Shown one piece after another: positions 27,998 through 64,000 of a DNA stretch of 64,000 nucleotides. The notes below the pieces were generated by a model. It saw nothing but the letters and a program-made list of their open reading frames with translations, did no database searches and was not told where the DNA came from. The stretch comes from Lytechinus pictus (taxonomy: Eukaryota). The stretch lies in contig NC_087245.1 in NCBI RefSeq assembly GCF_037042905.1, forward strand, positions 28,334,001 to 28,398,000, read 5' to 3'. Position 1 is the stretch's first letter, and the number at the start of each line of letters is the position of its first letter. Position numbers and translations under genes: made by a program.

Positions 27998-28274
27998 TTC
28001 AGTTATTTTCCTTATTGTTTTACATTTTGTTAGTTTTTCTTTTTGGTCCCCCTATTGCTTTTAATCATATTTTTTAAATTATCATATTGTATTTTGTTGC
28101 TTTCACCAATATTGTATGTTTTTATGATTTAATTCATATGATTTTGTGCTTTTGTCATTACCATGTTTGATTGTGTATTGTACTTTTTATTTTGTGTGTT
28201 TATGGACCCCTACGAAAAACAGCATTTGCTGATAGAGTGTTCCATCCCACTAGTGGAAAATGAATATATAAATA

Positions 28275-35488: not shown

Positions 35489-36846
35489 ATTGTGTTTTAA
35501 AAATGACTGATACTGTAAAAATGAAGTCTTCTATATCTTTCCTCTAGTATTGACTGATAAAAATTCCTGACGATGTTTCATCGATACTCAGGCATCCATA
35601 TATTTTTTAATCACAAAGAGATAAGAAAATTGAATGAAGATACAACACGTTTCATCATGAATTTGACCTTTATCGTTATTGAAAGACTTGTAAAATAAAC
35701 ATGATAAATATTATACCAAACTCGTGTTTTCATATAGCATTACTTTTTCATACACTACTACATAATTCTTAAATAATTACTGAAAGAGAAAAGGAGAGAA
35801 TGTGATATTATGGGTTGAGATATTTTAGATTTATAAATAGAGGGGGGGGGGTGGGTGGGGAAAAATAGACTCCAAATAATTATTGGAATGAGCATGGTGA
35901 AAGAAAATAGGGGAGATAGATGCATGGGAAACTATTATGTGTGTGAAGTGCTACAGACAGAAGCTTGAAAGGAGAAAGAGGGACGAGCCAGAGAAGCCTA
36001 AAGAACTGAAGAGAGGGAGTGCGATATTAATAAATAGACACATGAGAGATTGGGAGTAGAAAGATCATGAAGATATATAGAGAGGAAAAGTGATGAATAT
36101 ATTAAAGAGTGAGAGAGAGATGGAAGGGGAAAGGATGGGGTTGTTACTATAGTAATATAATGAGGTAAATTGTTACAGTATCTACCCCCATCCCCATCGT
36201 CCCAATGCTCAAGTGATCGGATCGACGGACATATATTCCATTAAAACACATCTTAAAAACATGCTCATCCCCCCTCATCCTGATTATTGTTGTTAGCAAC
36301 GCCTCCATCATTTCCCTCCTCAATAAATCCCTTAGCCCCTGCTTGAGTTTAGGTTATCTTTAAAGGGGAATCATCACTATGACATCCCATATGTGGCCAA
36401 TTTAAAGTCTCCATGAGTATAGATTATATATGATTATCAATATTTACAACTTTTAAAAATTCATAACTTTCTTGTTGTTTGTCCAATATTGTTCAAACTT
36501 TCACATATCAACTGGTCTAATTTATCTTTTTCTTATAAAAACAAGTTTTTAATTGGGTTGGATTCCCCTTTCAGTTATTTTCCTTATTGTTTTACATTTT
36601 GTTAGTTTTTCTTTTTGGTCCCCCTATTGCTTTTAATCATATTTTTTAAATTATCATATTGTATTTTGTTGCTTTCACCAATATTGTATGTTTTTATGAT
36701 TTAATTCATATGATTTTGTGCTTTTGTCATTACCATGTTTGATTGTGTATTGTACTTTTTATTTTGTGTGTTTATGGACCCCTACGAAAAACAGCATTTG
36801 CTGATAGAGTGTTCCATCCCACTAGTGGAAAATGAATATATAAATA

Positions 36847-39800: not shown

Positions 39801-39961
39801 ATTTCTCGTCATTCCTGACATATATATTTTCCATTGTAAGTCCATAAGAACTTGTACCCAGCATTTTTTCTAGCTCCATTGGCGAGTCCTAGCAGCTCTC
39901 TTGTTGCACCGACGAGGTTCTCGTTGACAAAGGTTGATTCCAAGATCCGCAGAAGTTTATT
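36847..39961 (-). mobile_element. Second copy of the same LINE insertion, created by the segmental duplication
   Basis: Same ORFs (37269-38081, 38252-39115), same lesions and same TSD at offset 8572. Confidence 0.92.
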
Positions 39962-42225: not shown

Positions 42226-44057
42226 ATGGAGTTGAAAGCAACTGTGATCCTTGCTATCCTGGCTGCACTTGCTATGTCAGGTAAGCCTTCAAATTTGTAT
42301 TTCGATCATCTGAAGGTATTATTACAAGATGATATTTTGATTATCGCAATTCATTGATAGAAATCATAACTATTTCTATTTTGTTTGATAAAAGGAGGAA
42401 TAACGCTTCATATCATTATCAATCACCACTGCTGTATTAATGGGGGAGGGGGCTAGGGGCTAGCCCCCAAACCTTCCGTGACCAAGCAAAATTTTCAATA
42501 CGAGAAAGAGAGATAAGTAGTGCAAAATGATTTTATTTTCTGAATGTTAAAATTTGTCACAAATTCATATTTTCATTTTAGAAGGTCAAAAGTTTCCGTC
42601 GCGATTTTAAAAAATATTTCCCCATTTTATTACGCAAGGTTTTTATGTGTCTTTATTACTATTATTATTTGGGGAAGGGGGTGATTATGTCTTTGTCAAA
42701 AGTTGTAACTCGTAATTCAACAATAATCATGATTTTCAGTATTCTGACTTTGTTGGGGGGGGGGGGGTTGCTAATACAAAAGAAAATTGCCTATGTCAAA
42801 TGGCTTATATCCTAAAATCTGTCAAATATTTTCAAGTTTAATATGACTATACATGAATAGTGTCACATCGAACCAAACAAACGATGAAAATCTTATTGTT
42901 CTTATAAATTCGGACTATAAGAACTAAATCATCATAAATCTTTAATCACATAAAATATATATGAAATATCAGACAGCAAGATATAGGCCTAGGCTCATTA
43001 TTGGTAAAAATTAACATTGTAAAAACTAAGACAAATATTTAACAGAAATATCACATCGGAAATGATTCATATCATTGGAATCCTGAAAGGCTTAAGAAAC
43101 TAATAGATTAATAGAAATTATTAAGTTTTCTGTACATTTTCCTCTTTTACAGCTAATGCACGAAGAGGTGATCGTGGAGGTATGGGGCCAGGGAGAGAGA
43201 GGGGAGAGGGTCGTTTCGGAGGAAGACCTGACGGAGTGCCAATGGGAGGGCCAAGGCGAGGAGGTGGTGGAATGATGGATGGAAGGAGGTTTGATGGCCC
43301 CGGGTTGGGGCTTGGTGCCCCTCAGAGGGACCAACGAAGACAATTTGGTGGTCCGATGGTTGGTGGAAGAAGATCTGACGGTCCTTTCCGTGGCTCCAGA
43401 CCTGAAGGAGTTGGAAGACCTTTCTTCGGTCAAGACGGAACCAGACGTGATGGTGGAGAAGAAGAAACCGCAGATGCCTCCAAAGAGTCTAAATCAATCT
43501 TTGATCGTTTTGGACTCGGTCCGCTTTTTAGAGGACAATCACGAGATCGGGGTCGTCTTCAGGATCAAGGAGGTCAGCATAACGACAACAGCGAAGAGGA
43601 TGGAGGTCATCGTCACCATCACCATCGCTACCACCCCCACCATCATCACCACCGTCATAATCATACTGAAGGCCAACGCCCTCACAACAAGACGGGAAAT
43701 TACCCACATCGTCATCACAACAAGACCGGAGACGGGGATTGGGACGGACCAAGATTCCAGATGAGGCCTTTCCGGTTCTTCAAAAACTGGCCATTTGGAA
43801 GACACAACCGAACCGAGGAAGGATCTCACGGACATGATGGCCGCCGCCATCCCTTTGGCAAGTTCCCAGGACGCTGGGGATCACATGAAAGCGAGGAAGA
43901 AGAGGAGGAGCAGCAGCAGCAGCAGGAGTCAACAACTAGGGAAAATGCAACCCCATCTTCCCCATCGGACGTGATAACACCATCCTCCCAACCGGAAGTG
44001 ATTGAGATTGCAATCAATGACAATGAAATAGATACTAATGTCATCGGACAACTGTAA
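42226..44057 (+). CDS. Trf: Transformer gene 3, 319 aa
   Basis: Exon 1 42226-42280, 872-nt intron, exon 2 43153-44057; protein identical to gene 2. Confidence 0.95.
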
Positions 44058-45448
44058 ATTGTGTTTTAAAAATGACTGATACTGTAAAAATGAAGTCTTC
44101 CATATCTTTCCTCTAGTATTGACTGATAAAAATTCCTGACGATGTTTCATCGATACTCAGGCATCCATATATTTTTTAATCACAAAGAGACAAGAAAATT
44201 GAATGAAGATACAACACGTTTCATCATGAATTTGACCTTTATCATTATTGAAAGACTTGTAAAATAAACATGATAAATATCATACCAAACTTATGTTCTT
44301 TCATAGCTTTACTTTTTCATACACTATACTAGATAATTTTTACATAATTTCTGAAAGAGAAAAGGAGAAAATGTGATATTATGGGTTGAGATATTTTAGA
44401 TTTATATAGAGGGGGGGGGTGGATGGGGAAAAGGAGACTCCAAATAATTATTGGAGTGAGCATGGTGAAAGAAAATAGGGGAGATAGATGCATGGGAAAC
44501 TATTATGTGTGTGAAGTGCTACAGACAGAAGCTTGAAAGGAGAAAGAGGGACGAGCCAGAGAAGCCTAAAGAACTGAAGAGAGGGAGTGCGATATTAATA
44601 AATAGACACATGAGAGATTGGGAGTAGAAAGATCATGAAGATATATAGAGAGGAAAAGTGATGAATATATTAAAGAGTGAGAGAGAGATGGAAGGGGAAA
44701 GGATGGGGTTGTTACTATAGTAATATAATGAGGTAAATTGTTACAGTATCTACCCCCATCCCCATCGTCCCAATGCTCAAGTGATCGGATCGACGGACAT
44801 ATATTCCATTAAAACACATCTTAAAAACATGCTCATCCCCCCTCATCCTGATTATTGTTGTTAGCAACGCCTCCATCATTTCCCTCCTCAATCAATCCCT
44901 TAGCCCCTGCTTGAGTTTAGGTTATCTTTAAGTTATTGTCCTTATTGTTTTACATTTTGTTAGTTTTTCTTTTAAGTCCCCCTATTGCTTTTAATCAAAT
45001 TTTGTTTTTATTATCATATTGTATTTTGTTGCTTTCACCAATATTGTATGTTTTTATGATTTAATTCATATGATTTTGTGCTTTTGTCATTACCATGTTT
45101 GATTGTGTATTGTACTTTTTATTTTGTGTGTTTATGGACCCCTACGAAAAACAGCATTTGCTGATAGAGTGCTCCATCCCACTCGTGGAAAATAAATATA
45201 TAAATAAATACATAAAAAATAAATGATATGAATGTAACTTACATCTGGTACATATCTCGAGGTGAGGTGAGTCATTGGCCCTACTATTTGTGATCTTTTA
45301 TTATAGAAAAAATAAATAATTCAAAATCGAAATTATACACATGTATCCTCGAATTTCGAAATATATATAAACAGATAGTTTTTGTTAAGAACTTGGATAG
45401 GAAAAGAAAAGGCATACCGGCCCGACAATACTCGAATTCGCATCTAGC

Positions 45449-46960
45449 CACTGGCGTAAATCCCGGGGGGATGGGGGGGGGATATATCCCCCCAACTTTT
45501 CGAGGAGGGGGGGGTGGCCTGTACAAACATCCCCCCACTTTTTACGAAATAAATGAAGAAAAAAAATCACAAGAGATAATTGTTTTATTGGTGAAAATTC
45601 TTCCCAAAATACCGCTTAACAAATAAAACAATATTATTGAATTATAAAATGCAAATAAAGACCCAGTTCACCATTTCCAAACGAAATACTTATGTCCTTA
45701 TTATAACATTGAAGAGAAACCTCCGTTTCTTCCAATTCATCAATGTTGGGGTCTTTGGGTAGGGAATAAGATGGAATGTCAATTTTTTTTTAATGTAATC
45801 TCTAATAAAACCATTAAACCATCATGGGGTAAAACAGATAATAATATTGGAGGGGTATTTGCCATATGGACATACAGTGGCGTAACTACGGGGGGCATGG
45901 GGGCACATCCCCCCCCCCCCCCCCATCGGCTGACCAAAAAAAAACGGGGAAAGGGGGAAAAGGAGAAAAGAGGGAGAAAGGAAGAGAAACGTAGTGGGAA
46001 AGAAGAAAATATTATTCATTATAATGTTATATTATATTATAATTATGTTATGTTACATTATACATAAGAAACATTTTTATCATAATTTTATGAAACATAA
46101 TTTGCCCAGGGCATACGTCTTCATTGTTCCTGGTGCTCGCATTGTCTGTTTAACGAGATATATAATCCTGTTGTACTAAAACATCCCTTTTTCAAGTCAA
46201 TATAAACCAAATATATTTCCTAGCACTTGAGTTATCATTGTTTTATGTAGTGACATATGCTTCTTTTTCATGACTAAAAAAGTGATTGCTCCATGTTAAG
46301 GTCTTCGTATATATGAAACATTTCCTTTCCGTGATTACGTTCGCATTAGTGGATTGGTGAGATTATCTGCTCTTAATGAATTCCTAAAATCAGTCCTTAA
46401 AATGTCCCTTCTTCTGAACTGAATATATCAAAAATTTTGAGCTCGCGCTTCGCGCTCGCATCATTTGGTTAATGAAATACGTATGGTCCTAGTTAATTCC
46501 TACAAAGAAACCTTAGAATGCCCCACTTCAGGTCTGAATTATCTAAATTTTCAGCTCGCGCATCGCGCTCGCATTGTTTAGCTAGACAGGTACATATCAT
46601 GATTACACAAATTTGATTATAATGTCCCTTTTTAGGTGTGAATATAAAAAAAATTCAGCTCGCGCTTCGCGCTCGCATTATTTGATCAGTGAGAAATATA
46701 CCCGTTTAATGACATTGTCCTTAAAATGTCTCTATTAGGTCAGTATAACAGGCAACTTAGCGCGCTTCGCGCGCTCATTAGCACACTCACTCGGTGATTC
46801 AACAATTTTGCTGGTGCCCCCCCCCCAATGCCGTGACCCACGATACGCCACTGTGGACATATCAATGACAATTCCTTGCATATCTAAAAACATGATTGCA
46901 AAAAAATGCCAAAATATTTCAGTCATCCCCCCCACCCATCAACACGGATTTACGCCAGTG
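45449..46960. mobile_element. Nested hAT-type element (level 2)
   Basis: TIR CACTGGCGTAAATCC/GGATTTACGCCAGTG; exact TSD CATCTAGC; empty site at ~54602. Confidence 0.9.
45875..46853. mobile_element. Nested hAT-type element (level 3)
   Basis: TIR CAGTGGCGTA/TACGCCACTG; exact TSD TGGACATA. Confidence 0.9.
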
Positions 46961-47669
46961 CATCTAGCCCTATATGCCAGCCAAAGAGTAATGACATTGA
47001 TGACATCGATGGCCATTGTCAATTTCATAACTAATAAAAATGAAAATCGCCCCTGGATACTTATAAGTAAATTTAGTGCATAGATGGTAGACGAGAATGT
47101 TCCATACCCCGTAAAAACATACCCTTGTTTAACCAATTTATTATCCCTTTATTCCAAATTTACTTGGAATATATTTTCATAGTTCGCGTACTCAGTAAAA
47201 AGAATAGTTTACATGAGTTATGATTAATCCTTCGCAGTGAATTTTTACTATGTTTAATCCTCCAGAATTTTTTTTAGATACTCCATTAATGAGACTTTTA
47301 TATTCCATTTTTACACAAAATTCCTGCCGTGGGAGGGGTCATCACAGGTAGATCAAGGGGGCGAAGCGGCGGCCCACCCCCTATTGGCGGCGCAAAATAG
47401 GAAAGTGAGGAGAAAATTAAGAAAGATAGGACGAGGAAGAAAATTAAATGATGGAAGGGGAGGGGAATAATTGAAAAAAAAAGAAAACTTTCAGGTCATA
47501 GTATAAAAATACAAAAATTCGCTCTCGCTTTGCCATAATACACAGCCATCTCTTTATTTCAAAACGTGCTTGATCTTTTTTACTTTTTAGATCGAAATAC
47601 ATAAAATCAAATTACTTATTTAGGAAGATATCCGTCTTTTAATAATTTGTAGTTTTAAATCTAAAAAAA

Positions 47670-48860
47670 AGCTCGCGCTTTGCGCTCGCATTGCTTATTG
47701 GGATAAACTGCTTGTTCTTTATTTCAAAAGTGCTTAAAAGATCCAGTTTTCAGATCTGAATATTAAAAAAATTCATTTAGCGCTTCGCGCTCGCATCAGT
47801 AATATGGTTGAGTCAGATACTATCCTGTTTATTGCTATAAGGTAAAAGAAGATTACTTTTTTGGTCGGAAAATAAAACAAAATATAAGATACGCTTCGCG
47901 CTCACATTAATTAAAATTTAGTTAGATAGCTACCATTTCCTTGATTTTAAAGTATGCTAATAATACAAATTTTTAGGCCGGAAATAACATATCTTCAGCA
48001 CACACTTCGCGCTCGAATCTAATATTTTCTAGTTAAATTCCTATCCTGTTCATGATTTGAAAAACTGTTACGATTGTCCAGTTTTTAGGTTGGAAAATAC
48101 AAACTTAGGCTCGCGCTTCGCGCCCGCATTAATTGTTTAGATTCCTATCTTGTTCATAATTTAAAAACAATACTAAGAATGTCCAGTATTTAGGTTGGGA
48201 AATCAAAAACTTTCACCTCTTGCTTCGCGGTCGCATTGTTTAGATTCCTATCCTGTTCATATTTTTTTTTTAAGTACTAAGAATGTCTAGTATTTAGGTT
48301 GGAAAATCAAAAACTTTCAGCTCGCGCTTTGCGCTCGCATTAATTGATTAGTTCCTATCCTGTTCATATTCTTTTTAAGATGCTATGAATGTCCAGTTTT
48401 TAGGTTGGAAAATAAAAAACTTTCAGCTCGCGCTCGCATTCATTCTTTACATTCATATTCCGTTCATTATTAAGTGCTAAGAATGTCCAGTTTTTAGGTT
48501 GGAAAATCAAAAACTTTCAGCTCGCGCTTCCCGCTCGCATTAATTGTTTAGATTCATATCCTGTTCATATTTTTTTTAAAGTGCTATGAATGTCCAGTAT
48601 TTAGGTTGGAAAATCAAAAATTTTCAGCTCGCGCTCGCGTCTATTGTTTAGTTAAATTCATATCCTGTTCAGGATTTGCAAAAGTGTTACGAATGTCTAG
48701 TTTGGAAATCAAATACTTTCAGCTCGCGCTTGCATTAATGGTTTAGGTAGGTTCGAATCTAGTTCATGGTCACAAATAATGTTCAGAATGTTCAATTTTC
48801 AGGTCACAATTTATGAAATATCAACATATTAGGGCTCGCGCTTCGCGCTCGCATTATTTA
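47670..48860. repeat. ~100-bp tandem array with core CAGCTCGCGCTTCGCGCTCGCATT (paralogue 55310-56680)
   Basis: Recurrent TCCAGTTTTTAGGTTGGAAAATCAAAAACTTTCAGCTCGCGC at ~95-106-bp spacing. Confidence 0.85.
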
Positions 48861-48904
48861 TTGAGGCCTTTCATCTTTAGTTAGGAATACCTCCCCTCTT
48901 CGAA

Positions 48905-48940
<36 letters not shown>

Positions 48941-49506
48941 TTGTTTGAGTTAGTAATTCTGTAGAACATAAAAACGGAAAACTCAATTGTGTCCCACCTA
49001 CCTTCAAGAAGAGATTTCCGCTCATGCCACCCGGTACCATGCGCTCTCTTAAACAATAAGCAATAAATTTATGCAAATGAAAGTTGACCAGGTCTGATCA
49101 TGGTTTGAAATTGAAAAGAGCAACTAGGTGAGCATTTCATGAAACAATAAAGTCAGTGATTTCCATTGACAAGTGTTATAAGCTACTGAAATCCTTGCAT
49201 CTGATTGGCTTAGAGCAAATTTGTCAAGGGAAAAACCATTGACAACGTGCCTTCATGAAACGCTCCCCCTGGAAATAACAAACTAAAAAAGCAATAAAAT
49301 GATTCAACCAGGTAATACCTGGAAAAGCCTGTCACGGTTTGGTACGAGGGCGGTTCTCGTCAGGGAGTGAAAGTGTATAAATACAGTGAGCTATAACAGA
49401 ATTTAATCAGGTTTGGAGCTGATCTTGTCATCCTGCTAGAGAAGCTATCAATACACGGAAAGAATTCAAACTTGCGGGACTGGAGTGACACCCCCAATAC
49501 GTCAAC

Positions 49507-51219
49507 ATGGAGTTGAAAGCAACTGTGATCCTTGCTATCCTGGCTGCACTTGCTATGTCAGGTAAGCCTTCAAATTTGTATTTCAATCATCTGAAGGTAT
49601 TATTACAAGATAAGATTTTGATTTTCGCAATTCATTGATAGAAATCATAACTATTTCTATTTTGTTTGTTAAAGGAGGAATAACACTTCATATCATTATC
49701 AATCACCACTGCTGTATTAATGGGGCCCCTAAACGTTCCGTGACCAAGCAAAATTTTCAATACGAGAAAGAAAGAAAAGGAGTGCAATATGATTTTATTT
49801 TTCTGAATGTAAAAATTTGTCACAAATTCAGATTTTCATTTTAGAAGGTCAAAATTTTCCCTCGCGATTTTCAAAAATAATTCCCCATACGCAAGGTTTT
49901 TATGTGTCTTTATTATTATCATTATTATTTTGGGAAGGGGGTGATTATGTCTTTGTCAAAAGTTGTAACTTGTAATTCAGTAATAATCATGATTTTCAGT
50001 ATTCTGATTTTGTTGGGGGGGTTGCTAATACACAAGAAAATTGCCTATGTCAAATGCTTTATATCCTAAAATCAGTCAAATATTTTCAAGTTTATTAAGA
50101 CTATACATGAATAGTGTCACATCGAACCAAACAAACGATGAAAATTTTATTGTTCTTATAAATTCGGACTATAAGAACTAAATCATCATAAATCTTTAAT
50201 TACATAAAATATATATGAAATATCAGACATAGCAAGATATAAGCCTAGGCTACTTATTGGTAAAATGAACATTGTAAAAAAAAAAAAATATTTAACAGAA
50301 ACATTCTTACAACAGTGTCACATCGGAAATAGTTCATATCATTGGAATCCTGAAAGGCTTAAGAAACTAATAAATTAATATAAATTATTAAGTTTTCTGT
50401 ACATTTACCTCTTTTACAGCCAATGCACGAAGAGATGATCGTGGAGGTATGGGGACTGGGAGAGAGAGGGGAGAGGGTCGTTTCGGAGGAAGGCCTGACG
50501 GAGTGCCAATGGGCGGGCCAAGGCGAGGAGGTGGTGGAGTGATGGATGGAAGGTTTGATGGCCCCGGGTTGGGGCTTGGTGCCCCTCAGATGGACCAACA
50601 AAGACAATTTGGTGGTCCGATGGGTGGTGGAAGAACATCTGACGGTCCTTTCCGTGGCTCCAGACCTGCAGGAGTTGGAAGACCTTTTTTCGGTCAAGAC
50701 GGAACCAGACGTGATGGTGGAGAAGAAGAAACCGCAGATGCCTCCAAAGAGTCCAAATCAATCTTTGATCGTTTTGGACTCGCTCCGATTTTTAGAGGAC
50801 AATCACGAGGTCGGGGTCGTCTTCAGGATCAAGGAGAAGGTCAGCATAACGACAGCAGCGAAGAGGATGGAGGTCATCGTCACCATCACCATCGCTACCA
50901 CCCCCACCATCATCACCACCGTCATAATCATACTGAAGGCCACCGCCCTCACAACAAGACGGGAGATTACCCACATCGTCATCACAACAAGACATTTGGA
51001 AGACACAACCGAACCGAGGAAGGATCTCACGGACATGATGGCCGCCGCCATCCCTTTGGCAACCGAGGACGCTGGGGATCACATGAAAGCGAGGAGGAAG
51101 AGGAGCAGCAGCAGCAGGAGTCAACAACTAGGGAAAATGCAACCCCATCTTCCCCATCGGAAGTGATAACACCATCCTCCCAACCGGAAGTGATTGAGAT
51201 TGCAATCAATGACAATTAA
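49507..51219 (+). CDS. Trf: Transformer gene 4, 284 aa
   Basis: Exon 1 49507-49561, 858-nt intron, exon 2 50420-51219; 66-nt in-frame deletion and earlier TAA. Confidence 0.95.
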
Positions 51220-52305: not shown

Positions 52306-54353
52306 TTAAGTTATTTTCCTTATTGGTTTACATTTTGTTGATTTTTCTTTTTTAGTCCCCCTATTGCTTTTAATCAAATTTTGTTTTTATTATCATATTG
52401 TATTTTGTTACTTTCACCAATATTGTATGTTTTTATTATTTAATTGATATGATTTTGTGCTTTTGTCATTATCATGTTTGATTGTATATTGTACTTTTTA
52501 TTTTTTGTGTGTATGGACCCCTACGAAAAACAGAATTTGCTGATAGAGTGTTCCATCCCACTAGTGGAAAATAAATATATACATAATACATAAAAAATGA
52601 ATGATATGAATGTAACTTACATCTGGTACATATCTCGAGGTGAGGTGAGTCATTGGCCGGTCTGCTTGGAGTTTGCCACGATTTTGTCGGAAAGAGTCCG
52701 CTCCCAGTACATGCCCGCCAAAAATTACATAGATTGCAGCTTTCTCCTATTATAGGCCTATGTAGCGAAGTGTCTGGCGTATCTAACATATTTTGGAAAT
52801 AGATCACCCAGAGTGGAACAAGATTTATGATCAGCATAGGGAATGCCAATGGTAATTGTACACAGTCTTGACAGTTGGCTGAAGACTTTCTCGCTGGAAC
52901 ACTGAGTTGCATGGGTTTACACGTACTCACCCAATACGTCTTTAATCAATCCAGGCATTCCCACTGATGCTTTTCACAAAGTAGTCTGGACTCTGGGGTG
53001 AGCAATTATAATCATTCCCCATGGAAGCTTACATCCATTTGACTTTAACTGATTTCTCTCCTTTCATCTTTAAACCCTTCTGAATACAATCTCATTAAAA
53101 TTCTCTGAGCTACTCTACTACTCTCATATATACAAAATTCCCATTAAAATTACTTCTTTTATTCTACTCCCGAACCCTCTTTACAAATTAATTTCCCAAA
53201 CTGAACATCATCCACAGCTATAGGCTAAATTTTCAATCACATACAAAAAAAGTATTAATACCCTACAAAGATCTGAAGTTCATTAACTTGGTTACCAGCA
53301 AAACCGAAATTCTTTTCTTGAATGCTAGCATTGACTCTCCAATTCAATCTTAACTAAGCCAGTCAACTTAACCCTACATACACTCTAAAAATATTGAGTA
53401 AAATTGCTCCATGAGGGTAATTATGTGTCCAACCAACATTGGGCATTTCTTTTGGGCATTTCTATTTATTCAGTGTGATGACTGAAAATGTTGCCCATTC
53501 TAAATAACCATACTGGCTTCCCACATTGAGTAAAATACTGCCTTACATCGATTGGGCACATATTATTTGTGATGCCCGGGCACCATGGCCCTGCGAAGCG
53601 GGGGGGGGGGGGGGGGGTCGGGGAGTGCTGAAGCACCCCAAAAATATAGTTGGGGATTCTGCGTGTACAATTTTCCATAGGCAGCACCCCCAGGTATTCT
53701 GAAAGATGTGTAAAATTGGGAAAAAGGTAACCAAGAAGACCTTCATTTTGTAGTGAAACCCCCTTATTTTTGCTTTTCAAATTTACATCAGCACCCCTGT
53801 CAAAAATCGTTCCCAGGGCCCTGCCGGGCACGCGGTTACGTAATAACGCAACATTATGTAAGTACATGTCAGACCAAAAATAAAAACTTAATATTTACAA
53901 AGTCAATACAAAATCTCTTTCATCTAAAATTCACAAATGAGTGAACATTCTCACTTGATTGTCAATAGTCATTTAAAATGATACTATTTATGACTTGAAT
54001 AATGTCACGGATGATATTTGTCGAAAAAAAAACAATAAAAGATTGAAAAAACAAAGAAATAAATATGAAAAATAATTTCATTAGCGTAATTTTTGGCTTG
54101 TAGTTGTGAGGAATGCCACAAAGAATATTTTCACAAAAAATTAGCTTTCTAGGAGTGAGTTAGAGCAAAGAGTATGATTAATAAATAATTCATATAAAAA
54201 GAAATATATGATAATTTATTTACGTATATGCAGTGGTGTAGATTATGTCATCCTCTACCTTCGTGCTGTTTTCGTCGTGATCGCTCGATCCGCGGCGCCG
54301 AGATCTTAAGGGGGGCTCTACAGGATATCCGAAGTTGACGTAATACCACCCGA

Positions 54354-56849
54354 CATGGGCGGAAATCCCAGGGGGGACAGGGGAAGCGCCCCCCTTCCAT
54401 TTTGGAAAGGGGGGGGGGACATAATATCAAATGTCCCCCCTACTATTTGTGGTCTTTTATTATAGAAAAAATAAATAATTCAAAATCGAAGTTATACACA
54501 TGTATCCTCGAATTTCGAAATATATATAAACAAATAGTTTTTGTTTTAAGAACTTGGTTAGGAAAAGAAAAGGCATACCGGCCCGATAATTCTCGAACTC
54601 GCATCTAGCCCTATATGCCAGCCAAAGAGTAATGACATTAATGACATCGATGGCCATTGTCAATTTCATAACTAATAAAAATGAAAATCGCCCCTGGATA
54701 CTTATAAGTAAATTTAGTGCATAGATAGTAGACGAGAATGTTCCATACCCCGTAAAAACATACCCTTGTTAAACCAATTCATTATCCCTTTATTCCAAAT
54801 TTACTTGGAATATATTTTCATAGTTCGCGTACTCAGTAAAAAGAATAGTTTTCATGAGTTATGATTAATCCTTCGCAGTGAATTTTGACTATGTTTAATC
54901 CCCCAAATTTTTTTTAGATACTCTATTAACGAGACTTTTATATTCCATTTTATACAAAATTCTTGCCGTGGGAGGGGTCATCATAGGTAGATCAAGGGGG
55001 CGAAGCGGCGGCCCACCCCCTATTGGCGGCGCAAAATAGGAAAGTGAGGAGAAAATTAAGAAAGATATGACGAGGAAGAAAATCAAATGATGGAAGGGGA
55101 GGGGAATAATTAAAAAAAAAAAAGAATTTCAGGTCATAGTATAAAAATACAAAAATTCGCTCTCGCTTTGGCATAATACACAGCCATCTCTTTATTTCAA
55201 AACGTGCTTAATTTTTTTTTACTTTTTAGATCGAAATATATAAACTCAAATTATTTATTTAGGAAGATATCCGTCTTTTCATAATTTGTAGGTTTAAATC
55301 TTTAAAAAAGCTCACGCTTTGCGCTCGCATTGCTTATTAGGATAAACTGCTTGTTCTTTATTTCAAAAGTGCTTGAAAGATCCAGTTTTCAGATCTGAAT
55401 ATAAAAAAATTATTTCGCGCTTCGCGCTCGCATCAGTAATATGGTTGAGTCAGATACTATCCTGTTTATTGCTATAAGGTAAAAGAAGATGACTTTTTTG
55501 GTCGGAAAAAAATAATATAGGATACGCTTCGCGCTCACATTAATTAAAATTTAGTTAGATAGCTACCATGTCCTTGATTTTAAAGTATGCTAATAATACA
55601 AATTTTTAGGCCAGAAATGACATATCTTCAGCACACACTTCGCGCTCGAATCTGATATTTTCTAGTTAAATTCCTATCCTGTTCATGATTTGAAAATCTG
55701 TTACGATTGTCCAGTTTTTAGGTTGGAAAATACAAACTTAGGCTCGCGCTTCGCGCCCGCATTAATTGTTTAGATTCCTATCTTGTTCATAATATAAAAA
55801 AAATACTAAGAATGTCCAGTATTTAGGTTGGGAAATCAAAAACTTTCACCCCTTGCTTCGCGGTCGCATTGTTTAGATTCCTATCCTGTTCATAATTTTT
55901 TTTTAAGTACTAAGAATGTCTAGTTTTTAGGTTGGAAAATCAAAAACTTTCAGCTCGCGCTTCGCGCTCGCATTAATTGATTAGTTCCTATCCTGTTCAT
56001 ATTATTTTTAAGATGCTATGAATGTCCAGTTTTTAGGTTGGAAAATAAAAAACCTTCAGCTCGCGCTGGCATTCATTCTTTAGATTCATATTCCGTTCAT
56101 TATTAAGTGCTAAGAATATCCAGTTTTTAGATTGGAAAATTAAAAACTTTCAGCTCGCGCTTCCCGCTCGCATTAATTGTTTAGATTCATATCCTGTTCA
56201 TATTCTTTTTAAAGTGCTATGAATGTCCAGTTTTTAGGTTGGAAAATCAAAAACTTTCAGCTCGCGCTCGCATTCATTCTTTACATTCATATTCCGTTCA
56301 TTATTAAGTGCTAAGAATGTCCAGTTTTTAGGTTGGAAAATCAAAAACTTTCAGCTCGCGCTTCCCGCTCGCATTAATTGTTTAGATTCATATTCTTTTT
56401 AAAATGCTATGAATGTCCAGTATTTAGGTTGGAAAATCAAAAATTTTCAGCTCGCGCTCGCGTCTATTGTTTAGTTAAATTCCTATCCTGTTCAGGATTT
56501 GAAAAAGTGTTACGAATGTCTAGTTTGGAAATCAAATACTTTCAGCTCGCGCTTGCATTAATGGTTTAGGTAGGTTCGAATCTAGTTCATGGTCACAAAT
56601 AATGTTCAGAATGTTCAATTTTCAGGTCACAATTTATGAAATATCAACATATTAGGGCTCGCGCTTCGCGCTCGCATTATTTATTGAGGCCTTTCATATT
56701 TAGTTAGGAATACCTACCCTCTTCGAAATATATATATAAATATATATATATGTATGTGTGTGTTTGTTTGAGTTAGTAATTCTGTAGAACATAAAAACGG
56801 AAAACTCAATTGTGTCCCACCTACCTTCAAGGAGAGATTTCCGCTCATG
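54354..56849. mobile_element. Non-autonomous hAT-type element upstream of Trf gene 5
   Basis: TIR CATGGGCGGAAATC...GATTTCCGCTCATG; 8-bp TSD CCACCCGA/CCACTCGG of a site that is single (CCACCCGG) before genes 1-3. Confidence 0.85.
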
Positions 56850-57327
56850 CCACTCGGTACCATGCACTCTCTTAAACAATAAGCAATAAATTTATGCAAA
56901 TGAAAGTTGACCAGGTCTGATCATGGTTTGATATTGAAAAGAGCAACCAGGTGAGCATTTCATGAAACAATAAAGTCAGTGATTTCCACTGACAAGTGTT
57001 ATAAGCTACTGAAATCCTTGCATCTGATTGGCTTAGAGCAAATTTGTCAAGGGAAAAACCATTGACAACGTACCTTCATGAAACGTTCCCCCGGTAAATA
57101 ACAAACTAAAAAAGCAATAAAATGATTCAACCAGGTAATACCTGGAAAAGCCGGTCACGGTTTGGTACGAGGGCGGTTCTCGTCAGGGAGTGAAAGTGTA
57201 TAAATACAGTGAGCTATAACATAATTTAATCAGGTTTGGAGCTGATCTTGTCATCCTGATAAGCTATCAATTTACACGGAAAGAATTCAAACTTGCGGGA
57301 CTGGAGTGATACCCCCAATACGTCAAC

Positions 57328-59097
57328 ATGGAGTTGAAAGCAACTGTGATCCTTGCTATCCTGGCTACACTTGCTGTGTCAGGTAAGCCTTCATATTTGT
57401 ATTTCAATCATCTGAAGGTATTATTACAAGATAATATTTTGATTTTCGCAATTCATTGATAGAAATCATAACTATTTCTATTTTGTTTGTTAAAGGAGGA
57501 ATAACACTTTATATCATTATCAATCACCACTGCTGTATTAATGGGGCACCTAAACGTTCCGTGACCATGCAAAATTTTCAATACGAGAAAGAAAGAAAAG
57601 GAGTGCAATATGATTTTATTTTCTAAATGTAAAAATCTGTAACAAATTCAAATTTTCATTTTAGAAGGTCAAAATTTTCCCTCGCGATTTTCAAAAATAA
57701 TTCCCCATACGCAAGGTTTTTATGTGTCATTATTATCATTATTATTTTGGGAAGGGGGTGATTATGTCTTTGTCAAAAGTTGTAACTTGTAATTCAACAA
57801 TAATCATGATTTTCAGTATTCTGATTTTGTTGGGGGCGTTGCTAATACAAAAGAAAATTGCCTATGTCAAATGGTTTATATCCTAAAATCTGTCAAATAT
57901 CTTCAAGTTTAATATGACTATACATGAATAGTGTCACATCGAACCAAACAAACGATGAAAATCTTATTGTTCTTATAAATTCGGACTATAAGAACTAAAT
58001 CATCATAAATCTTTAATTACATAAAATCTATATGAAATATCAGACATAGCAAGATATAGTTCTAGGCTACTTATTGGTAAAATGAACATTGTAAAAAAAT
58101 ATATATTTAACAGAAACATTCTTACAACAGTGTCACATCGGAAATAGTTCATATCATTGGAATCCTGAAAGGCTTAAGAAACTAATAAATTAATAGAAAT
58201 TATTAAGTTTTCTGTACATTTTCCTCTTTTACAGCCAATGCACGAAGAGATGATCGTGGAGGTATGGGGACTGGGAGAGAGAGGGGAGAGGGTCGTTTCG
58301 GAGGAAGGCCTGACGGAGTGCCAATGGGCGGGCCAAGGCGAGGAGATGGTGGAGTGATGGATGGAAGGAGGTTTGATGGCCCCAGGTTGGGGCTTGGTGC
58401 CCCTCAGATGGACCAACGAAGACAATTTGGTGGTCCGATGGGTGGTGGAAGAAGATCTGACGGTCCTTTCCGTGGCTCCAGACCTGAAGGAGTTGGAAGA
58501 CCTTTCTTCGGTCAAGACGGAACCAGACGTGATGGTGGAGAAGAAGAAACCGCAGATGCCTCCAAAGAGTCCAAATCAATCTTTGATCGTTTTGGACTGG
58601 CTCCGATTTCTAGAGGACAATCACGAGGTCGGGGTCGTCTTCAGGATCAAGGAGAAGGTCAGCATAACGACAGCAGCGAAGAGGATGGAGGTCATCGTCA
58701 CCATCGCTACCACCCCCACCATCATCACCACCGTCATAATCATACTGAAGGCCACCGCCCTCACAACAAGACGGGAGATTACCCACATCGTCATCACAAC
58801 AAGACCGGAGACGGGGATTGGGACAGACCAAGATTTCAGATGAGGCCTTTCCGGTTCTTCAAAAACTTGCCATTTGGAAGACACAACCGATCCGAGGAAG
58901 GATCTCACGGACATGATGGCCGCCACCATCCCTTTGGCAACCGAGGACGCTGGGGATCACATGAAAGCGAGGAGGAAGAGGAGCAGCAGCAGCAGGAGTC
59001 AACAACTAGGGAAAATGCAACCCCATCTTCCCCATCAGAAGTGATAACACCATCCTCCCAACCGGAAGTGATTGAGATTGCAATCAATGACAATTAA
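57328..59097 (+). CDS. Trf: Transformer gene 5, 305 aa
   Basis: Exon 1 57328-57382 (MELKATVILAILATLAVS), 852-nt intron, exon 2 58235-59097; earlier TAA. Confidence 0.95.
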
Positions 59098-60683
59098 ATA
59101 GATACTAATGTCACCGGACAACTGTAAATTGTGTTTTAAAAATGACTAATACTGTAAAAATGAAGTCTTCCATATCTTTCCTCTAGTATTGACTGATAAC
59201 CTGACGATGTTTCATCGATTCTCAGGTATCTATATATTTTTTAATCATAAACAGACAAGAAAATTGAATGGAGATACAAAACGTTTCATCATGAAATTGA
59301 CCTTTATCATTATTGAAAGACTTGTAAAATAAACATGATAAATATCATACCAAACTCATGTTCTTTCATAGCATGTTTACTATTTCATACACTTCTAGAT
59401 ATTTTTTAAATAATTACTGAAAGAGAAAAGGAGAGAATGTGATATTATGGGTTGAGATATTTTAGATTTATATAGAGAGGGGGGGGGGGGTGGGTGGGGA
59501 AAAGGAGACTCCAAATAATTATTCGAGTGAGCATGGTGAAAGAAAATAGGGGAGAGAGATGCATGGGGAAACTATTATGTGTGTGAAGTGCTACAGACAG
59601 AAGCTTGAAAGGAGAAAGAGGGACGAGCCAGAAAAGCCTAGAGAACTGAAGAGAGAGAGTGCGATATCAATAAATAGACACATGAGAGATTGGGAGTAGA
59701 AAGATCATGAAGATATATAGAGAGGAAGAGTGATGGATATATTGAAGAGTGAGAGAGAGATGGAAGGGGAAAGGATGGGGTTGTTACTATAGCAATATAA
59801 TGAGGTAAATTGTTACAGTATCTACCCCCATCCCCATCGTCCCAATGCTCAAGTGATCGGATCGACGGCCATATATTCCTTTAAAACACATCTTAAAAAC
59901 ATGGTCATCCCCCCTCATCCTGATTATTGATGTTAGCAACGCCTCCATCATTTCCCTCCTCAATCAATCCCTTAGCCCCTGCTTGAGTTTAGGTTATCTT
60001 TAAGTTATTTTCCTTATTGTTTTACATTTTGTTAGTTTTTTTTTAAATCCCCCTATTGCTTTTAATCATACTTTGTTTTTATTATCATATTGTATTTTGT
60101 TGATTTCACCAATATTGTATGTTTTTATGATTTGATTCATATGATTTTGTGCTTTTGTCATTACCATGTTTGATTGTGTATTGTACTTTTTATTTTGTGT
60201 GTTTATGGACCCCTACGAAAAACAGCATTTGCTGATAGAGTGTTCCATCCCACTCGTGGAAAATAAATATATAAATAAATACATAAAAAATAAATGATAT
60301 GAATGTAACTTACATCTGGTACATATCTCGAGGTGGGGTGAGTCATTGGCCGGTCTGCTTGGAGTTTGCCACGATGTTGTCGGAAAGAGTCCGCTCCCAG
60401 TACATGCCCGCCAGAATTACATAGATTGCAGCTTTCTCCTATATATAGGCCTATGTAGGGATGTGTCTGGCGTATTTAACACCTTTTGGAAATAGATCAC
60501 CCAGAGTGGAACAAGATTTATAATCAGCATATAGGGAATGTCAATGGTAATTGTACACAGGCTTGACAGTTGGCTGAAGACTTTCTCGCTGGAACACTGA
60601 GTTGCATGGGTTTACACGTACTCACCCAATACGTCTTTAATTATTCCAGGCATTCCCACTGATGCTTTTCACAAAGTAGTCTG

Positions 60684-60994
60684 GGGCCGATTGCACGAAA
60701 GGGTCTTTCCAAGGACCGTCTTTCGTGTCGCCCATCTTTTATGATGCGCTATAAGCGGGGTGTTTCTGAAATTTATGATAAACAAATAAAATTCGTAAGC
60801 TTGCTTTTAAATCAAATTTTATACAATTTCATGAGATATCACATCATTTTATAAACAAATATTTTGTTTATTTTAACGGACAAATAAAATATATTTGCAG
60901 ATAATTTATTTGAAATGCGTTTTACATGGCGTATCATAAAAGATGGGCGACACGAAAGACGGTCCTTGGAAAGACCCTTTCGTGCAATCGGCCC
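60684..60994. mobile_element. Young PIF/Harbinger-like MITE
   Basis: ~60-bp perfect TIR starting GGGCCGATTGCACGAAAGGG; 3-bp TSD CTG; empty site in the other spacers. Confidence 0.9.
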
Positions 60995-61818
60995 CTGGAC
61001 TCTGGGGTGAGCAATTATAATCATTCCCCATGGAAGCTTACATCCATTTGACTTTAACTTATTTCTCTCATTTCATCTTTAAACCCTTCTGAATACAATC
61101 TCATTAAAATTCTCTGAGCTACTCCACTACTCTCATATATACAAAATTCCCATTAAAATTACTTCTTTTATTCTACTCCCGAACCCTCTTTACAAATTAA
61201 TTTCCCAAACTGAACATCATCCACAGCTATAGGCTACATTATCAATCACATACAAAACAAACAGTATTAAGTACCCTACAAAGATCTGAAGTTTATTAAC
61301 TTGGTTACCAGCAAAACCGAAATTCTTTTCTTAAATGCTAATATTAACTCTCCCATCCAATCTTAACTAAGCCAGTCAACTTAACCCTATATACACTTTA
61401 AAAGTATTGTGTAAAATTGCTCCATGAGGGTGATTATGTGTCAAACCAACATTGGGTATTTCTTTTGGGCATTTTTATCTATTCAGTGTGATGACTGAAA
61501 ATTTTGCCCATTCTAAATAACCATACTGGCTTCCCACATTGAGTAAAATACTGCCCCACATTGATTGGGCACATATTATTTGTGATGCCCGGGCACCAAG
61601 TCCCTGGGAAGCGGGGGTGGGGGTCGGGGAGTGCTGAAGCACCCCAAAAATATAGTTGGGGATTCTGCGTGTACTATTTTCCATAGGCAGCACCCCCAGG
61701 TATTCTGAAAGATGTGTAAAATTGGGAAAAAGGGTAACCAAAAAGACCTTCATTTTGTAGTGAAACCCCCTTATTTTTGCTTTTCAAATTAACATCAGCA
61801 CCCCCAGTCAAAAATCGT

Positions 61819-64000
61819 ACACTACTAGATAATTTTTACATAATTACTGAAAGAGAAAAGGAGAGAATGTGATATTATGGGTTGAGATATTTGAAGAGAG
61901 AGAGAGAGAGTGCGATATCAATAAATAGACACATGAGAGATTGGGAGTAGAAAGATCATTAATATAATTATATAGAGAGGAAGAGTGATGAATATATTAA
62001 AGAGTGAGAAAGAGATGGAAGGGGAAGGATGGGGTTGTTACTATAGCAATATAATGAGGTAAATTGTTACAGTATCTACCCCCGTCCCCATCGTCTCAAT
62101 GCTCAAGTGATTGGATCGACGGACATATATTCCTTAAAAACACATCTTAAAAACATGCTCATATCCCTCATCCTGATTATTGTTGTTAGCAACGCCTCCA
62201 TCATTTTTCTCCTCAATCAATCCCTTAGCCCCTGCTTGAGTTTAGGTTATCTTTAAAGAGATGGTCCAGGCTGAAAATATTTATATCTTAAAGGAGAATG
62301 AAACTCTTGGAGCAAGTTAGCTTTTGTGAAAGCAGAAAAATCAAAGAATAAGATCAACAAAAGTTTGAGTAAAATAGGACTAGCAATAGAAGAGTTATGA
62401 GCATTTGAATATCGAGATCACTAATGCTATGGAGATCCTCCAATTGGCAACGCAACCGAGATCTATGATATCACAGATGAACAACTCTCCCCTTTTGGAC
62501 ACTGAAAATATACCCCAAAACATCTCTTTTTGCTCTTTCTAATCATATGACAAACGATTCATCAATGATATAATGTTGTGAAATCTCTGTACTTGTCCTC
62601 TCATAAAGAGAACACCTCACCTTGTGATAGATTCTATAAAAGTGAGAATATAAGTGAAATAAGTACTAAAGCAATGAGGGAGTTGTACGTGTGTGACGTC
62701 ACAGATCTTGGTCGCGTTGCCAATGGGAGGATCTACATGGCATTAGTGATCTCAATATTCAAATACTCATATCTTTCTTATTATTCATTCAATCTTCCTC
62801 AAACTTTCAATGATATGTTTCTTTGATTTTTCTCTTTGATATGGATTCAGCTGGTTTCAAGGGTTTCATTCTCCTTTAATAACTAGTGTAGAATTCACTG
62901 AGCAAAATGCCGAAAATTCCATCATAATCGGATAACAAATAATAAAGTTATTGAAGTTTAAAGTTTAGCAATATTTTGTGAAAACAGTCGTCATGAATAT
63001 TCATTAGGAGGGCTGATGATGTCACACCTCCACTTTCCGTTTTCTTATGTTATTACATAAGATCTTATTTTTTTCATTATTTCATACTTGTGTGAATTAT
63101 ATGTCTCCCTTATAATGAAATAAGTTGCAGCAATAAATATATAATGCACTAAATCAGTTGTCAATCCAATTTTTCTAGTTCTTGGAGGAAAAAAACTGAA
63201 TAAACCTAATTTCATATAATAAAATACAAAAGAACAAGTGGGGATGCGACATCAACAGCCCACTTAATGAATATTCATGACGACTGTTTTCACAAAATAT
63301 TGCTAAACTTTAAAATTAAATAACTTTGTTATTTTTTTCCCGATTTTAAAGAAATTTTCAGCATTTTGCTGAGTGAATTCTACTCTATTTATTAAGCTAT
63401 AAATATTTTCAGCCTGGACCATCCCTTTAAGTTATTTTCCTTATTGGTTTACATTTTGTTGAATTTTCTTTTTTAGTCCCCCTATTGCTTTTAATCATAT
63501 TTTGTTTTTATTATCATATTGTATTTTGTTACTTTCACCAATATTGTACGTTTTTATGATTTAATTCATATGATTTTGTGCTTTTGTCATTACCATGTTT
63601 GATTGTGTATCAGCATTTGCTGATAGAGTGTTCCATCCCACTAGTGGAAAATAAATATATAAATAAATAGATAAAAATAAATGATATGAATGTAACTTAC
63701 ATCAAGTACATATCTCGAGGTGAGGTGAGTCATTGGCCGGTCTGCTTGGAGTTTGCCACGATGTTGTCGGAAAGAGTCCGCTCCCAGTACATGCCCGCCA
63801 GAAATTACATAGATTGCAGCTTTCTCCTCTAGGCCTATGTAGGGAAGTGTCTGGCGTATTTAATACCTTTTGGAAATAGATCACCCAGAGTGGAACAAGA
63901 TTTATAATCAGCATAGGGAATGTCAATGGTAATTGTACACAGTCTTGGCAGTTGGCTGAAAACTTTCTCGCTGGAACACTGAGTTGCATGGGTTTACACA
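61819..64000 (+). repeat. Sixth array unit: Trf 3' flank and spacer with no Trf gene
   Basis: Spacer sequence ...aaaatcgt joins directly to acactactagataatttttacataatt, which elsewhere lies just downstream of the Trf polyA region. Confidence 0.85.
62257..63426. mobile_element. TTAA MITE family B with nested TTAA MITE family C (62292-62875)
   Basis: Outer: TTAA|AGAGATGGTCCAGGCTGAAAATAT...ATATTTTCAGCCTGGACCATCCCT|TTAA. Inner: TTAA|AGGAGAATGAAAC...GTTTCATTCTCCT|TTAA. Confidence 0.88.

What the first reader, a model, noticed from the sequence alone, without database searches (positions are those of the whole stretch)
61800..61920. Deletion scar of a sixth Trf gene
Seen: in other units ...CAAAAATCGT continues TCCCAGGGCCCTG into the upstream region, promoter and gene. 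At 61818/61819 it joins directly to ACACTACTAGATAATTTTTACATAATT, the sequence that lies just after the polyA region of gene 3 (~44331). The rest of the 3' flank and spacer follow normally, with a second ~190-bp deletion at ~61893. Inference: ~3.1 kb (gene 1-3 type) to ~5.6 kb (gene 4-5 type) containing promoter, both exons and 3' UTR was removed with about 1 nt of microhomology. This is gene loss by clean excision rather than decay into a pseudogene.
Basis: partly seen in the sequence, partly recalled or inferred. Interest (0 to 1): 0.7.

Follow-up and report, generated by a model that had tools for sequence, protein, structure and literature searches.

The report
Probable whole-gene deletion, Trf cluster
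In the painted sea urchin's cluster of Transformer (185/333) immune genes, two intergenic spacers are joined at a clean breakpoint with no gene between them, most likely because one gene copy was cut out whole; this kind of event is already proposed for this unstable family, and no sequencing reads were available to confirm it.

Summary
At 61818/61819, spacer segment D (824 nt, 94-95% identical to four other copies) joins directly to the 3' flank of a Trf gene. The join shares one exact nucleotide (T; imperfect TCRT). It lacks 3.1-5.6 kb of upstream region, both exons and 3' UTR. A further ~184-bp deletion lies at 61893, next to a (GA)7 repeat. The genome is Lytechinus pictus and the genes are 185/333 (Trf) homologues.

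A tandem or ectopic duplication ending at the same two points would create the same junction, so I tested that.
- Flank-only duplication of the gene-5 spacer is rejected (AU p=0.009).
- One-gene duplication is rejected in the gene part (p=0.014, 8e-11 and 0.029 in three partitions), and a transposon marker disagrees with it.
- These tests assume no gene conversion, yet the units are clearly mosaics.

Deletion is therefore the best reading (about 0.6) but is not proven. No public run was listed, so the junction could not be checked in reads.

- A sixth gene lies just past the window, so the lost gene would be a seventh. That sixth gene carries a frameshift.
- The locus holds two more gene-less spacers and one unambiguous 1.8-kb deletion.

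Whole-gene deletion is already proposed for S. purpuratus Trf clusters, so this is a new member of a known kind.

The parts
58231..59097 (+). Exon 2 of Trf gene 5 (exon 1 at 57328-57381), the last gene before the junction
   Evidence: tblastn of the NCBI L. pictus model P0001 gives 99.7% over residues 18-305, with exon 1 at 100%. Homology to Sp185/333 proteins.
59385..60684 (+). Spacer S5, segments A (3' flank) and B/C, downstream of gene 5. Its A/B TTAA site is empty.
60683..60995 (.). 313-bp MITE-like insertion with 70-nt inverted ends, private to S5
60995..61818 (+). Spacer segment D of S5, the left side of the junction. Its last ~240 nt are a MITE-like dispersed repeat, cut 11-13 nt short of its right end.
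61818..61819 (.). Non-homologous junction D-end | A-start, with 1 nt of exact microhomology (T) and no filler
61819..61892 (+). A', the first 74 nt of a Trf 3' flank. It starts 261-294 nt after where a stop codon would be. Over the part gene 6 retains (about 50 nt) it is identical to the gene-6 flank.
61893..61912 (+). Site of the second deletion (181-187 bp, which removed the poly-G tract of segment A), next to an expanded (GA)7 repeat
61899..62256 (+). A'', the rest of the 3'-flank segment A. Closest copy is the gene-4 spacer (96.5%).
62257..63430 (.). Foldback MITE-a at the A/B TTAA site, shared with spacers S4 (internally deleted) and S8 but absent from S5. A nested MITE-c (62292-62879) is private to this copy.
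63431..64000 (+). Segments B/C of spacer Sx. Beyond the window it continues as D (64063-64889), E, and gene 6 (ATG 65937).

Best explanation
The window holds five genes of a Lytechinus pictus tandem array of Trf (185/333) immune genes, which has six in all. Each gene is followed by a spacer of segments A-B-C-D-E. Between genes 5 and 6 there are two spacers in a row: S5 (segments A to D) and Sx (segments A to E). They are joined D-end to A-start at 61818/61819. The most likely history is that a seventh gene once lay between them. A single non-homologous end-joining event (two breaks, or a replication template switch) then removed 3.1-5.6 kb, comprising segment E, the upstream region and promoter, both exons, the intron and the 3' UTR. 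The right break lies about 50 nt past the poly(A) signal. The join uses one shared T. What is shown: the junction, its breakpoints, the absence of any gene remnant, and that Sx is not a copy of S5. What is inferred: the polarity (loss rather than gain), the end-joining mechanism, and any role for the nearby poly-G tracts or the inverted repeat at the left break.
For: Junction anatomy and uniqueness.
Sx is an independent spacer lineage. It shares a MITE at the same TTAA site with S4 and S8, whereas S5 has an empty site. Five informative sites group S4, S8 and Sx; none pairs S5 with Sx exclusively. The ML tree is ((S1,(S5,S6)),(Sx,(S4,S8))) and the AU test rejects an S5+Sx clade, p=0.009.
The one-gene duplication version predicts that gene 6 is sister to gene 5. 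That clade is rejected overall (p=5e-6) and in each of three partitions (0.014, 8e-11, 0.029). A 2.5-kb transposon with TIRs and a 7-bp target-site duplication lies upstream of genes 4 and 5, while gene 6 has a pristine empty site.
Sliding windows show no excess similarity between the copies that either duplication model predicts.
Deletion-type end joining demonstrably operates in this array. There is an unambiguous 1781-bp deletion with 2-nt microhomology at 45280/45281, and there are 184-bp and 78-bp deletions in segment A. Two further gene-less spacers exist.
The false-join argument rests on the two sides of the junction sharing no homology.
In S. purpuratus, whole-gene deletions without pseudogene remnants have been proposed for this family (PMC5103432, PMC8634487, PMC10887614).
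Against: A deletion and a duplication with ends at A-start and D-end give the identical junction, and polarity cannot be read from one haplotype.
All topology tests assume tree-like descent, but nearest neighbours change every few hundred bp. For example, exon 2 of gene 6 is 99-100% identical to genes 1-3, and Sx matches S8 at 98.5% only over the MITE. Gene conversion could therefore have erased the signal of an old duplication.
The spacer tree pairs S4 with Sx and S5 with S6, which is what a one-gene duplication would give for the spacers.
There is no read-level or population support.
PMC10887614 reports false deletions in long-read assemblies of Trf clusters.
Confidence: 0.6

Rival explanations
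1. The junction was made by a duplication, not a loss. One version is a non-homologous tandem duplication running from an A-start to a D-end (flank only, or spacer 4 + gene 5 + spacer 5). The other is an aberrant repair event that copied an S4/S8-type spacer into the D/E boundary of S5. In none of these did a gene ever lie between S5 and Sx.
For: The geometry is identical to that of a deletion. The spacer tree pairs Sx with S4/S8 and S5 with S6, as a one-gene duplication predicts for the spacers. S8 is a spacer copy with unrelated sequence on both sides, so flank-only copies may arise at this locus. Gene conversion is frequent enough to blur the gene-part signal.
Against: The flank-only tandem version is rejected (AU p=0.009; MITE marker). 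The one-gene version requires gene 6 to be sister to gene 5, which is rejected in all three partitions. It also requires precise loss of the 2.5-kb transposon from gene 6. No window-by-window excess similarity is seen between the predicted copies. The ectopic version needs one homologous end and one non-homologous end, which is more complex than a two-break deletion.
Confidence: 0.25
2. The junction is an assembly artefact: a gene-containing stretch was dropped when this repetitive locus was assembled.
For: PMC10887614 (section 3.3) documents false deletions in PacBio assemblies of S. purpuratus Trf BACs. No reads could be laid here.
Against: The two sides of the junction share no homology (only 1 nt), so an overlap-based assembler has no reason to join them. 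Both flanks differ by 4-5% from every other copy and carry private insertions, so they are not collapsed repeats. The junction is unique in the assembly and lies inside a 44.3-Mb contig with no N in the window or in the 80 kb of flank fetched.
Confidence: 0.06
3. The deletion is real but somatic or regulated: a footprint of the Trf copy-number reduction reported in single coelomocytes, captured because of the tissue that was sequenced.
For: Oren et al. 2019 (PMC6563789, listed and discussed in PMC10887614 section 4.2) report fewer SpTrf genes in coelomocytes than in sperm. The breaks lie near poly-G tracts and at the inner edge of an inverted repeat.
Against: Somatic deletions differ between cells and would not dominate a consensus assembly. 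The right-hand spacer carries its own later changes (a nested MITE, the second deletion, an expanded GA repeat), although these do not date the junction itself. There are no data on tissue source or reads.
Confidence: 0.04

Closest known systems
Putatively deleted Sp185/333 (SpTrf) genes in S. purpuratus Cluster 3 / Locus 2 (Oren et al. 2016, PMC5103432; Barela Hudgell & Smith 2021, PMC8634487)
   Same: Same gene family and the same tandem-cluster setting. A gene-sized gap occurs where the repeat pattern predicts a gene, and no pseudogene or gene fragment is left behind. A partial segmental duplication 'missing the region expected to include a gene' is also described there.
   Different: In S. 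purpuratus the sites are marked by GA-repeat islands of several kb and no base-pair junction is given. Here the main junction has no repeat at all, only 1 nt of microhomology, and just a (GA)7 lies 75 nt away. The species is different (L. pictus), and I found no paper describing its Trf cluster.
Deletions of SpTrf genes from BAC inserts grown in E. coli (Barela Hudgell et al. 2024, PMC10887614)
   Same: Loss of one or more whole Trf genes. The verified deletion edges lie at repeats or poly-G/poly-C tracts. Here poly-G tracts lie about 190 nt left and about 90 nt right of the breaks in intact units, and the segment-A poly-G tract was lost three times independently.
   Different: Those events arose in bacteria during culture, whereas this one is in a chromosome assembly. 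That paper also shows that assemblies of this locus can give false deletions.
End-joining (NHEJ / microhomology-mediated) copy-number deletions in tandem immune gene families such as KIR and plant NBS-LRR clusters (general knowledge; the comparison is drawn in PMC10887614 section 4.2)
   Same: Blunt or 1-2-nt microhomology joins between non-homologous points of a repeat unit, changing gene number.
   Different: In those families, gene-number change is mostly attributed to unequal crossing-over between homologous repeats, which leaves no novel junction. This junction is non-homologous.

Membership tests
Trf (185/333) gene family | Protein similar to described 185/333 proteins (glycine-rich N-terminal half, histidine-rich C-terminal half) | tested here: met
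   the gene-1 exon 2 product hits Sp185/333 proteins of S. purpuratus (E 1.7e-48 to 6e-23, 42-53% identity), S. intermedius (E 1.7e-37) and H. erythrogramma (E 1.3e-17). Translations. No Pfam family matched.
Trf (185/333) gene family | Two exons: a short leader exon and one exon for the mature protein | tested here: met
   the NCBI model P0001 maps as 18 aa at 57328-57381 plus 288 aa at 58231-59094. Exon-1 copies are present ahead of all six genes.
Trf (185/333) gene family | Tightly clustered genes in segmental duplications with flanking GA repeats | tested here: inconclusive
   Six genes lie in 43 kb, in the same orientation, in 7-8.6-kb units. GA repeats are only 3-7 units long, in the 3' flank and at the start of exon 2, not the long arrays of S. 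purpuratus.
End-joining deletion scar | Two sequences that are separated in intact units are directly abutted, with 0-few nt of microhomology, no filler and no transposon ends | tested here: met
   D-end | A-start, 1 nt shared, no inserted bases. The left break truncates a MITE copy 11-13 nt from its end.
End-joining deletion scar | Polarity: the intact state (with a gene) is ancestral | tested here: inconclusive
   Both duplication alternatives are rejected by AU tests and transposon markers. Gene conversion violates the assumptions of those tests, and no outgroup or second haplotype was available.
End-joining deletion scar | Junction present in the underlying reads | not testable with these tools
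   no public run was listed for the stretch, so read laying could not be used.
S. purpuratus-type 'GA-island' gene deletion remnant | A long GA repeat island occupying the place of the missing gene | tested here: not met
   only (GA)7 at 61896-61909, which is 75 nt right of the junction. No repeat lies at the junction itself.

The most novel reading that the evidence does not exclude
The junction is one footprint of a recurrent, site-biased excision process that removes whole Trf transcription units, with breaks favoured near poly-G tracts or inverted repeats. Such a process would act in the germ line, and perhaps also in immune cells, as has been hypothesised for S. purpuratus coelomocytes. 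The three gene-less spacers in this locus and the absence of gene fragments would then reflect a mechanism rather than accidents.
Probability: 0.05. Interest if true: 0.8.

Novelty: new member of a known kind. Interest (0 to 1): 0.3.

Why it matters
Sea urchin Trf genes are a textbook case of a fast-changing innate immune family, and gene loss from their clusters has so far been inferred from spacing and repeat islands or seen in bacterial clones. If this junction holds up in reads, it would be, among the papers I read, the first base-pair view of how a whole Trf gene leaves a chromosome. It would show loss by end joining with almost no homology, rather than by unequal crossing-over or slippage at repeats. 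It would also offer simple PCR markers for asking whether the copy number varies between L. pictus animals, and between sperm and coelomocytes. L. pictus is a genetically tractable urchin, so such tests are practical. On present evidence it remains one unverified structural variant in one assembly.

Tried and rejected
1. Read support: the look-up of sequencing runs on 61300-62300 listed no run, so read laying could not be used. None was listed, which is not the same as none existing.
2. Second haplotype or alternative contig: the junction and its flanks occur once in the assembly. Trf-type genes were found only in this cluster by DNA search.
3. Flank-only tandem duplication of the gene-5 spacer: rejected.
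4. One-gene tandem duplication (spacer 4 + gene 5 + spacer 5 copied to Sx + gene 6 + S6): rejected for the gene part, but the spacer tree is compatible with it. It is kept as a rival because of gene conversion.
5. The two gene-less joins (61818 and 69798) as copies of one 'gene + double spacer' unit: rejected. The breakpoints differ, S7 lacks MITE-a, and S7 is the copy most distant from Sx.
6. Retro- or transposon-mediated removal: there is no poly(A), no target-site duplication and no transposon end at the junction. The right break is about 50 nt past the poly(A) signal, not at a cleavage site.
7. Dating the event: not possible, because flank divergence (4-5%) only dates the spacer copies.
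8. Earlier scan notes gave nothing on this junction beyond the finding itself.
9. Literature on an L. pictus Trf cluster: none found. Only a single L. variegatus Trf gene is mentioned, in PMC8634487.

Full report
WHAT THE LOCUS IS.
The window is C1:28,334,001-28,398,000 of an 812-Mb assembly. The exon 2 product of gene 1 matches an NCBI protein model of Lytechinus pictus on a 44.3-Mb contig (89% identity). That model is named 'serine/threonine-protein phosphatase 1 regulatory subunit 10-like', evidently an automatic name. The next matches are Sp185/333 proteins of S. purpuratus (42-53% identity, E down to 1.7e-48), S. intermedius and H. erythrogramma. The model maps as a two-exon gene on gene 5. 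These are therefore Trf (185/333) homologues.

Exon 2 copies lie at 26008-26916, 34580-35488, 43149-44057, 50416-51219 and 58231-59097. A sixth lies at 66821-67728, just beyond the window. A DNA search of the whole assembly found no others. Genes 1-3 sit in 8.57-kb units that are 99.5% identical; the other units differ by 4-8%.

Each gene is followed by a spacer that I divide into five segments:
- A: the 3' flank
- B/C
- D
- E
- then the next gene's upstream region.

THE OBSERVATION.
- 60995-61818 is a D segment, 94-95% identical to the D segments ahead of genes 2, 3, 5 and 6.
- In all four of those...AATCGT is followed by TCCCAGGGCCCTGCCGGGC.
- At 61819 the sequence instead runs into ACACTACTAGATAATTTTTACATAATT. 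This is the start of segment A, found after all six genes 261-294 nt past the stop codon and 57 nt past the start of AATAAA.
- The parents read ...TCGT|TCCC and ...TCAT|ACAC, so one T is shared exactly (TCRT imperfectly). There are no filler bases.
- The missing interval is 3132 bp (gene 3), 3100 bp (gene 6) or 5578 bp (gene 5) by reference unit.
- The second deletion (181-187 bp) lies between 61892 and 61899. It removed the poly-G tract of segment A and abuts a (GA)7 repeat, which is longer than in the other copies.
- The junction 30-mer is unique in the assembly.

In a periodic array, a D-end|A-start junction is produced equally by two kinds of event:
- deleting E + upstream + gene from one unit;
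- a non-homologous duplication whose ends lie at an A-start and a D-end. This could be flank-only (S5 copied to Sx), a one-gene copy (spacer 4 + gene 5 + spacer 5 copied to Sx + gene 6 + S6), or an ectopic copy of a spacer.

I therefore looked for the sister relationships that each model predicts.

TESTS.
(a) Rare insertions, A/B boundary. At the A/B boundary (TTAA site), spacers S3, S5, S6 and S7 are empty and S1/S2 carry one MITE. S4, Sx and a distant spacer S8 carry another foldback MITE at the same site. It is full-length in Sx and S8 and internally deleted in S4. Sx also has a private nested MITE, and S5 has a private 313-bp MITE.

(b) Rare insertions, upstream transposon. A 2.5-kb transposon (TIR CATGGGCGGAAATC, 7-bp target duplication) lies upstream of genes 4 and 5. 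Genes 1-3 and 6 have the empty site.

(c) Informative sites. Five sites group S4, S8 and Sx; none pairs S5 with Sx exclusively.

(d) Spacer tree. The ML tree of A+B/C+D (1874 columns) is ((S1,(S5,S6)),(Sx,(S4,S8))). An S5+Sx clade is rejected (AU p=0.009).

(e) Gene tree. The tree of upstream through 3' UTR is ((G4,G5),(G6,(G1,(G2,G3)))). A G5+G6 clade is rejected overall (p=5e-6) and in the upstream, middle and 3' partitions (0.014, 8e-11, 0.029). This argues against the one-gene model, as does the transposon marker.

(f) Sliding windows. 300-nt windows show no excess of the predicted partner as nearest neighbour under either duplication model.

CAVEAT ON THESE TESTS.
The same sliding-window analysis shows that the units are mosaics. 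Nearest neighbours switch every few hundred bp:
- gene 6 exon 2 is 99-100% identical to genes 1-3;
- S5 and S6 are 98-99% identical over 300-450 nt of segment A;
- Sx and S8 are 98.5% identical over the MITE but only 92-96% identical beside it.

Gene conversion is therefore frequent, and tree tests can be misled by it. An old duplication whose signal was overwritten cannot be excluded. The spacer tree itself (S4 with Sx, S5 with S6) is what a one-gene duplication predicts for the spacers. For this reason I keep the duplication family at about 0.25.

WHY DELETION IS STILL FAVOURED.
- It needs one event and makes no prediction that fails.
- It is compatible with any age, whereas a duplication must be as old as the deepest splits in the array to explain 4-5% divergence between its copies.
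- Deletion-type end joining is demonstrably active here. The spacer after gene 3 has an unambiguous 1781-bp deletion joining segment C to the interior of the 2.5-kb transposon, with 2 nt of microhomology (45280/45281).
- Segment A has lost its poly-G tract independently in Sx (184 bp), S6 (78 bp) and S8 (truncated).
- There are two more gene-less spacers. After gene 6, D is cut at 69798 and followed by about 50 nt, a SINE-like repeat, and the late part of an old A-B-C copy (87-91% identity) that runs into unrelated sequence. S8 lies 32 kb beyond the end of the array, about 40 kb past the junction.

MECHANISM (INFERRED).
The most likely mechanism is two breaks joined by classical or microhomology-mediated end joining, or a replication template switch.
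- The left break lies 11-13 nt inside the right end of a ~250-bp MITE-like dispersed repeat, exactly at the inner edge of its terminal inverted repeat.
- In intact units, poly-G tracts lie about 190 nt left and about 90 nt right of the breaks.
- Poly-G and repeat tracts at deletion edges were reported for SpTrf BAC deletions (PMC10887614).
- Whether these structures caused the breaks was not tested.

ARTEFACT.
PMC10887614 warns that long-read assemblies of Trf clusters produced false deletions. Here the two sides share no homology. Both are 4-5% different from every other copy and carry private insertions. The junction lies inside a 44.3-Mb contig, and neither the window nor the 80 kb of flank I fetched holds any N. 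A false join therefore seems unlikely (about 0.06), but no reads could be laid.

COMPARISON WITH WHAT IS KNOWN.
Whole-gene deletion without pseudogene remnants has been proposed for S. purpuratus Trf clusters. It was inferred from long GA-repeat islands at positions where allelic or paralogous clusters have genes, and from a partial segmental duplication lacking its gene (PMC5103432; PMC8634487).

This case belongs to the same kind. It differs in species, in having a base-pair junction, and in lacking a repeat island: only a (GA)7 lies 75 nt away. I found no paper on an L. pictus Trf cluster.

- The lost gene would be a seventh, not a sixth.
- Gene 6 carries a +2 (GA) frameshift near the start of exon 2, so decay-type lesions also occur at this locus, if that is not a sequencing error.

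VERDICT.
It is a new member of a known kind and of modest interest.

Noticed in passing
L001:1937-3728 (extended window coordinates 65937-67728): A sixth Trf gene lies just past the window. Its exon 2 has a 2-nt (GA) expansion in the short GA run near its start, which shifts the frame and gives stop codons about 40 codons in. It is either a pseudogene in the making, a sequencing error in a dinucleotide run, or a case for the RNA-level frame changes described for this family.
   Followed up: partly
L001:5199-6951 (69199-70951): A second gene-less join. After gene 6, segment D is cut at 69798, about 15 nt before its poly-G tract. It is followed by about 50 nt, a ~295-bp SINE-like dispersed repeat with a long T run, and then the late part of an old A-B-C spacer copy (87-91% identity) that runs into unrelated DNA.
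   Followed up: partly
L005:8600-10000 and L003:1-8400 (102600-112400): A third spacer copy (S8) lies 32 kb beyond the end of the array with no gene on either side. It is split by a 6.9-kb insertion that contains a ~1-kb CT-rich (GA on the other strand) island. Its foldback MITE is 98.5% identical to the one in the scar spacer, while its flanks are only 92-96% identical.
   Followed up: partly
window 45280/45281: An unambiguous 1781-bp deletion in the spacer after gene 3. Segment C is joined to the interior of the 2.5-kb transposon upstream of gene 4, with 2 nt (CC) of microhomology. It removed segments D and E and the transposon's left end.
   Followed up: yes
window 54351-56850 and 45279-49027: A ~2.5-kb transposon-like insertion (terminal inverted repeat CATGGGCGGAAATC, target duplication CCACCCG, internal ~100-bp and ~200-bp tandem repeats) lies about 0.5 kb upstream of the ATG of genes 4 and 5 only. 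It may alter their regulation relative to genes 1-3 and 6.
   Followed up: partly
window 27270, 35842, 44411, 51604, 59479 (poly-G in segment A): The poly-G tract in the 3' flank has been deleted or truncated independently in three of the nine spacer copies (Sx, S6, S8). The boundaries of the 8.57-kb units of genes 1-3 (33127, 41698) also fall within poly-G tracts.
   Followed up: partly
window 28274-31390 and 36846-39962, minus strand: The extra 3.1 kb in the spacers after genes 1 and 2 is a truncated non-LTR retrotransposon (RVT_1, E 6e-31; a weak endonuclease match).
   Followed up: yes
window 33177-35751 (gene 2): In partition trees, gene 2 is identical to gene 3 in the upstream part and identical to gene 1 in the 3' part. 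This fits the separate scan note that gene 2 is a recombinant of the two.
   Followed up: partly
window 57328-59097: The public NCBI model for gene 5 is named 'serine/threonine-protein phosphatase 1 regulatory subunit 10-like'. By sequence it is a 185/333 (Trf) protein, so the name is misleading.
   Followed up: yes
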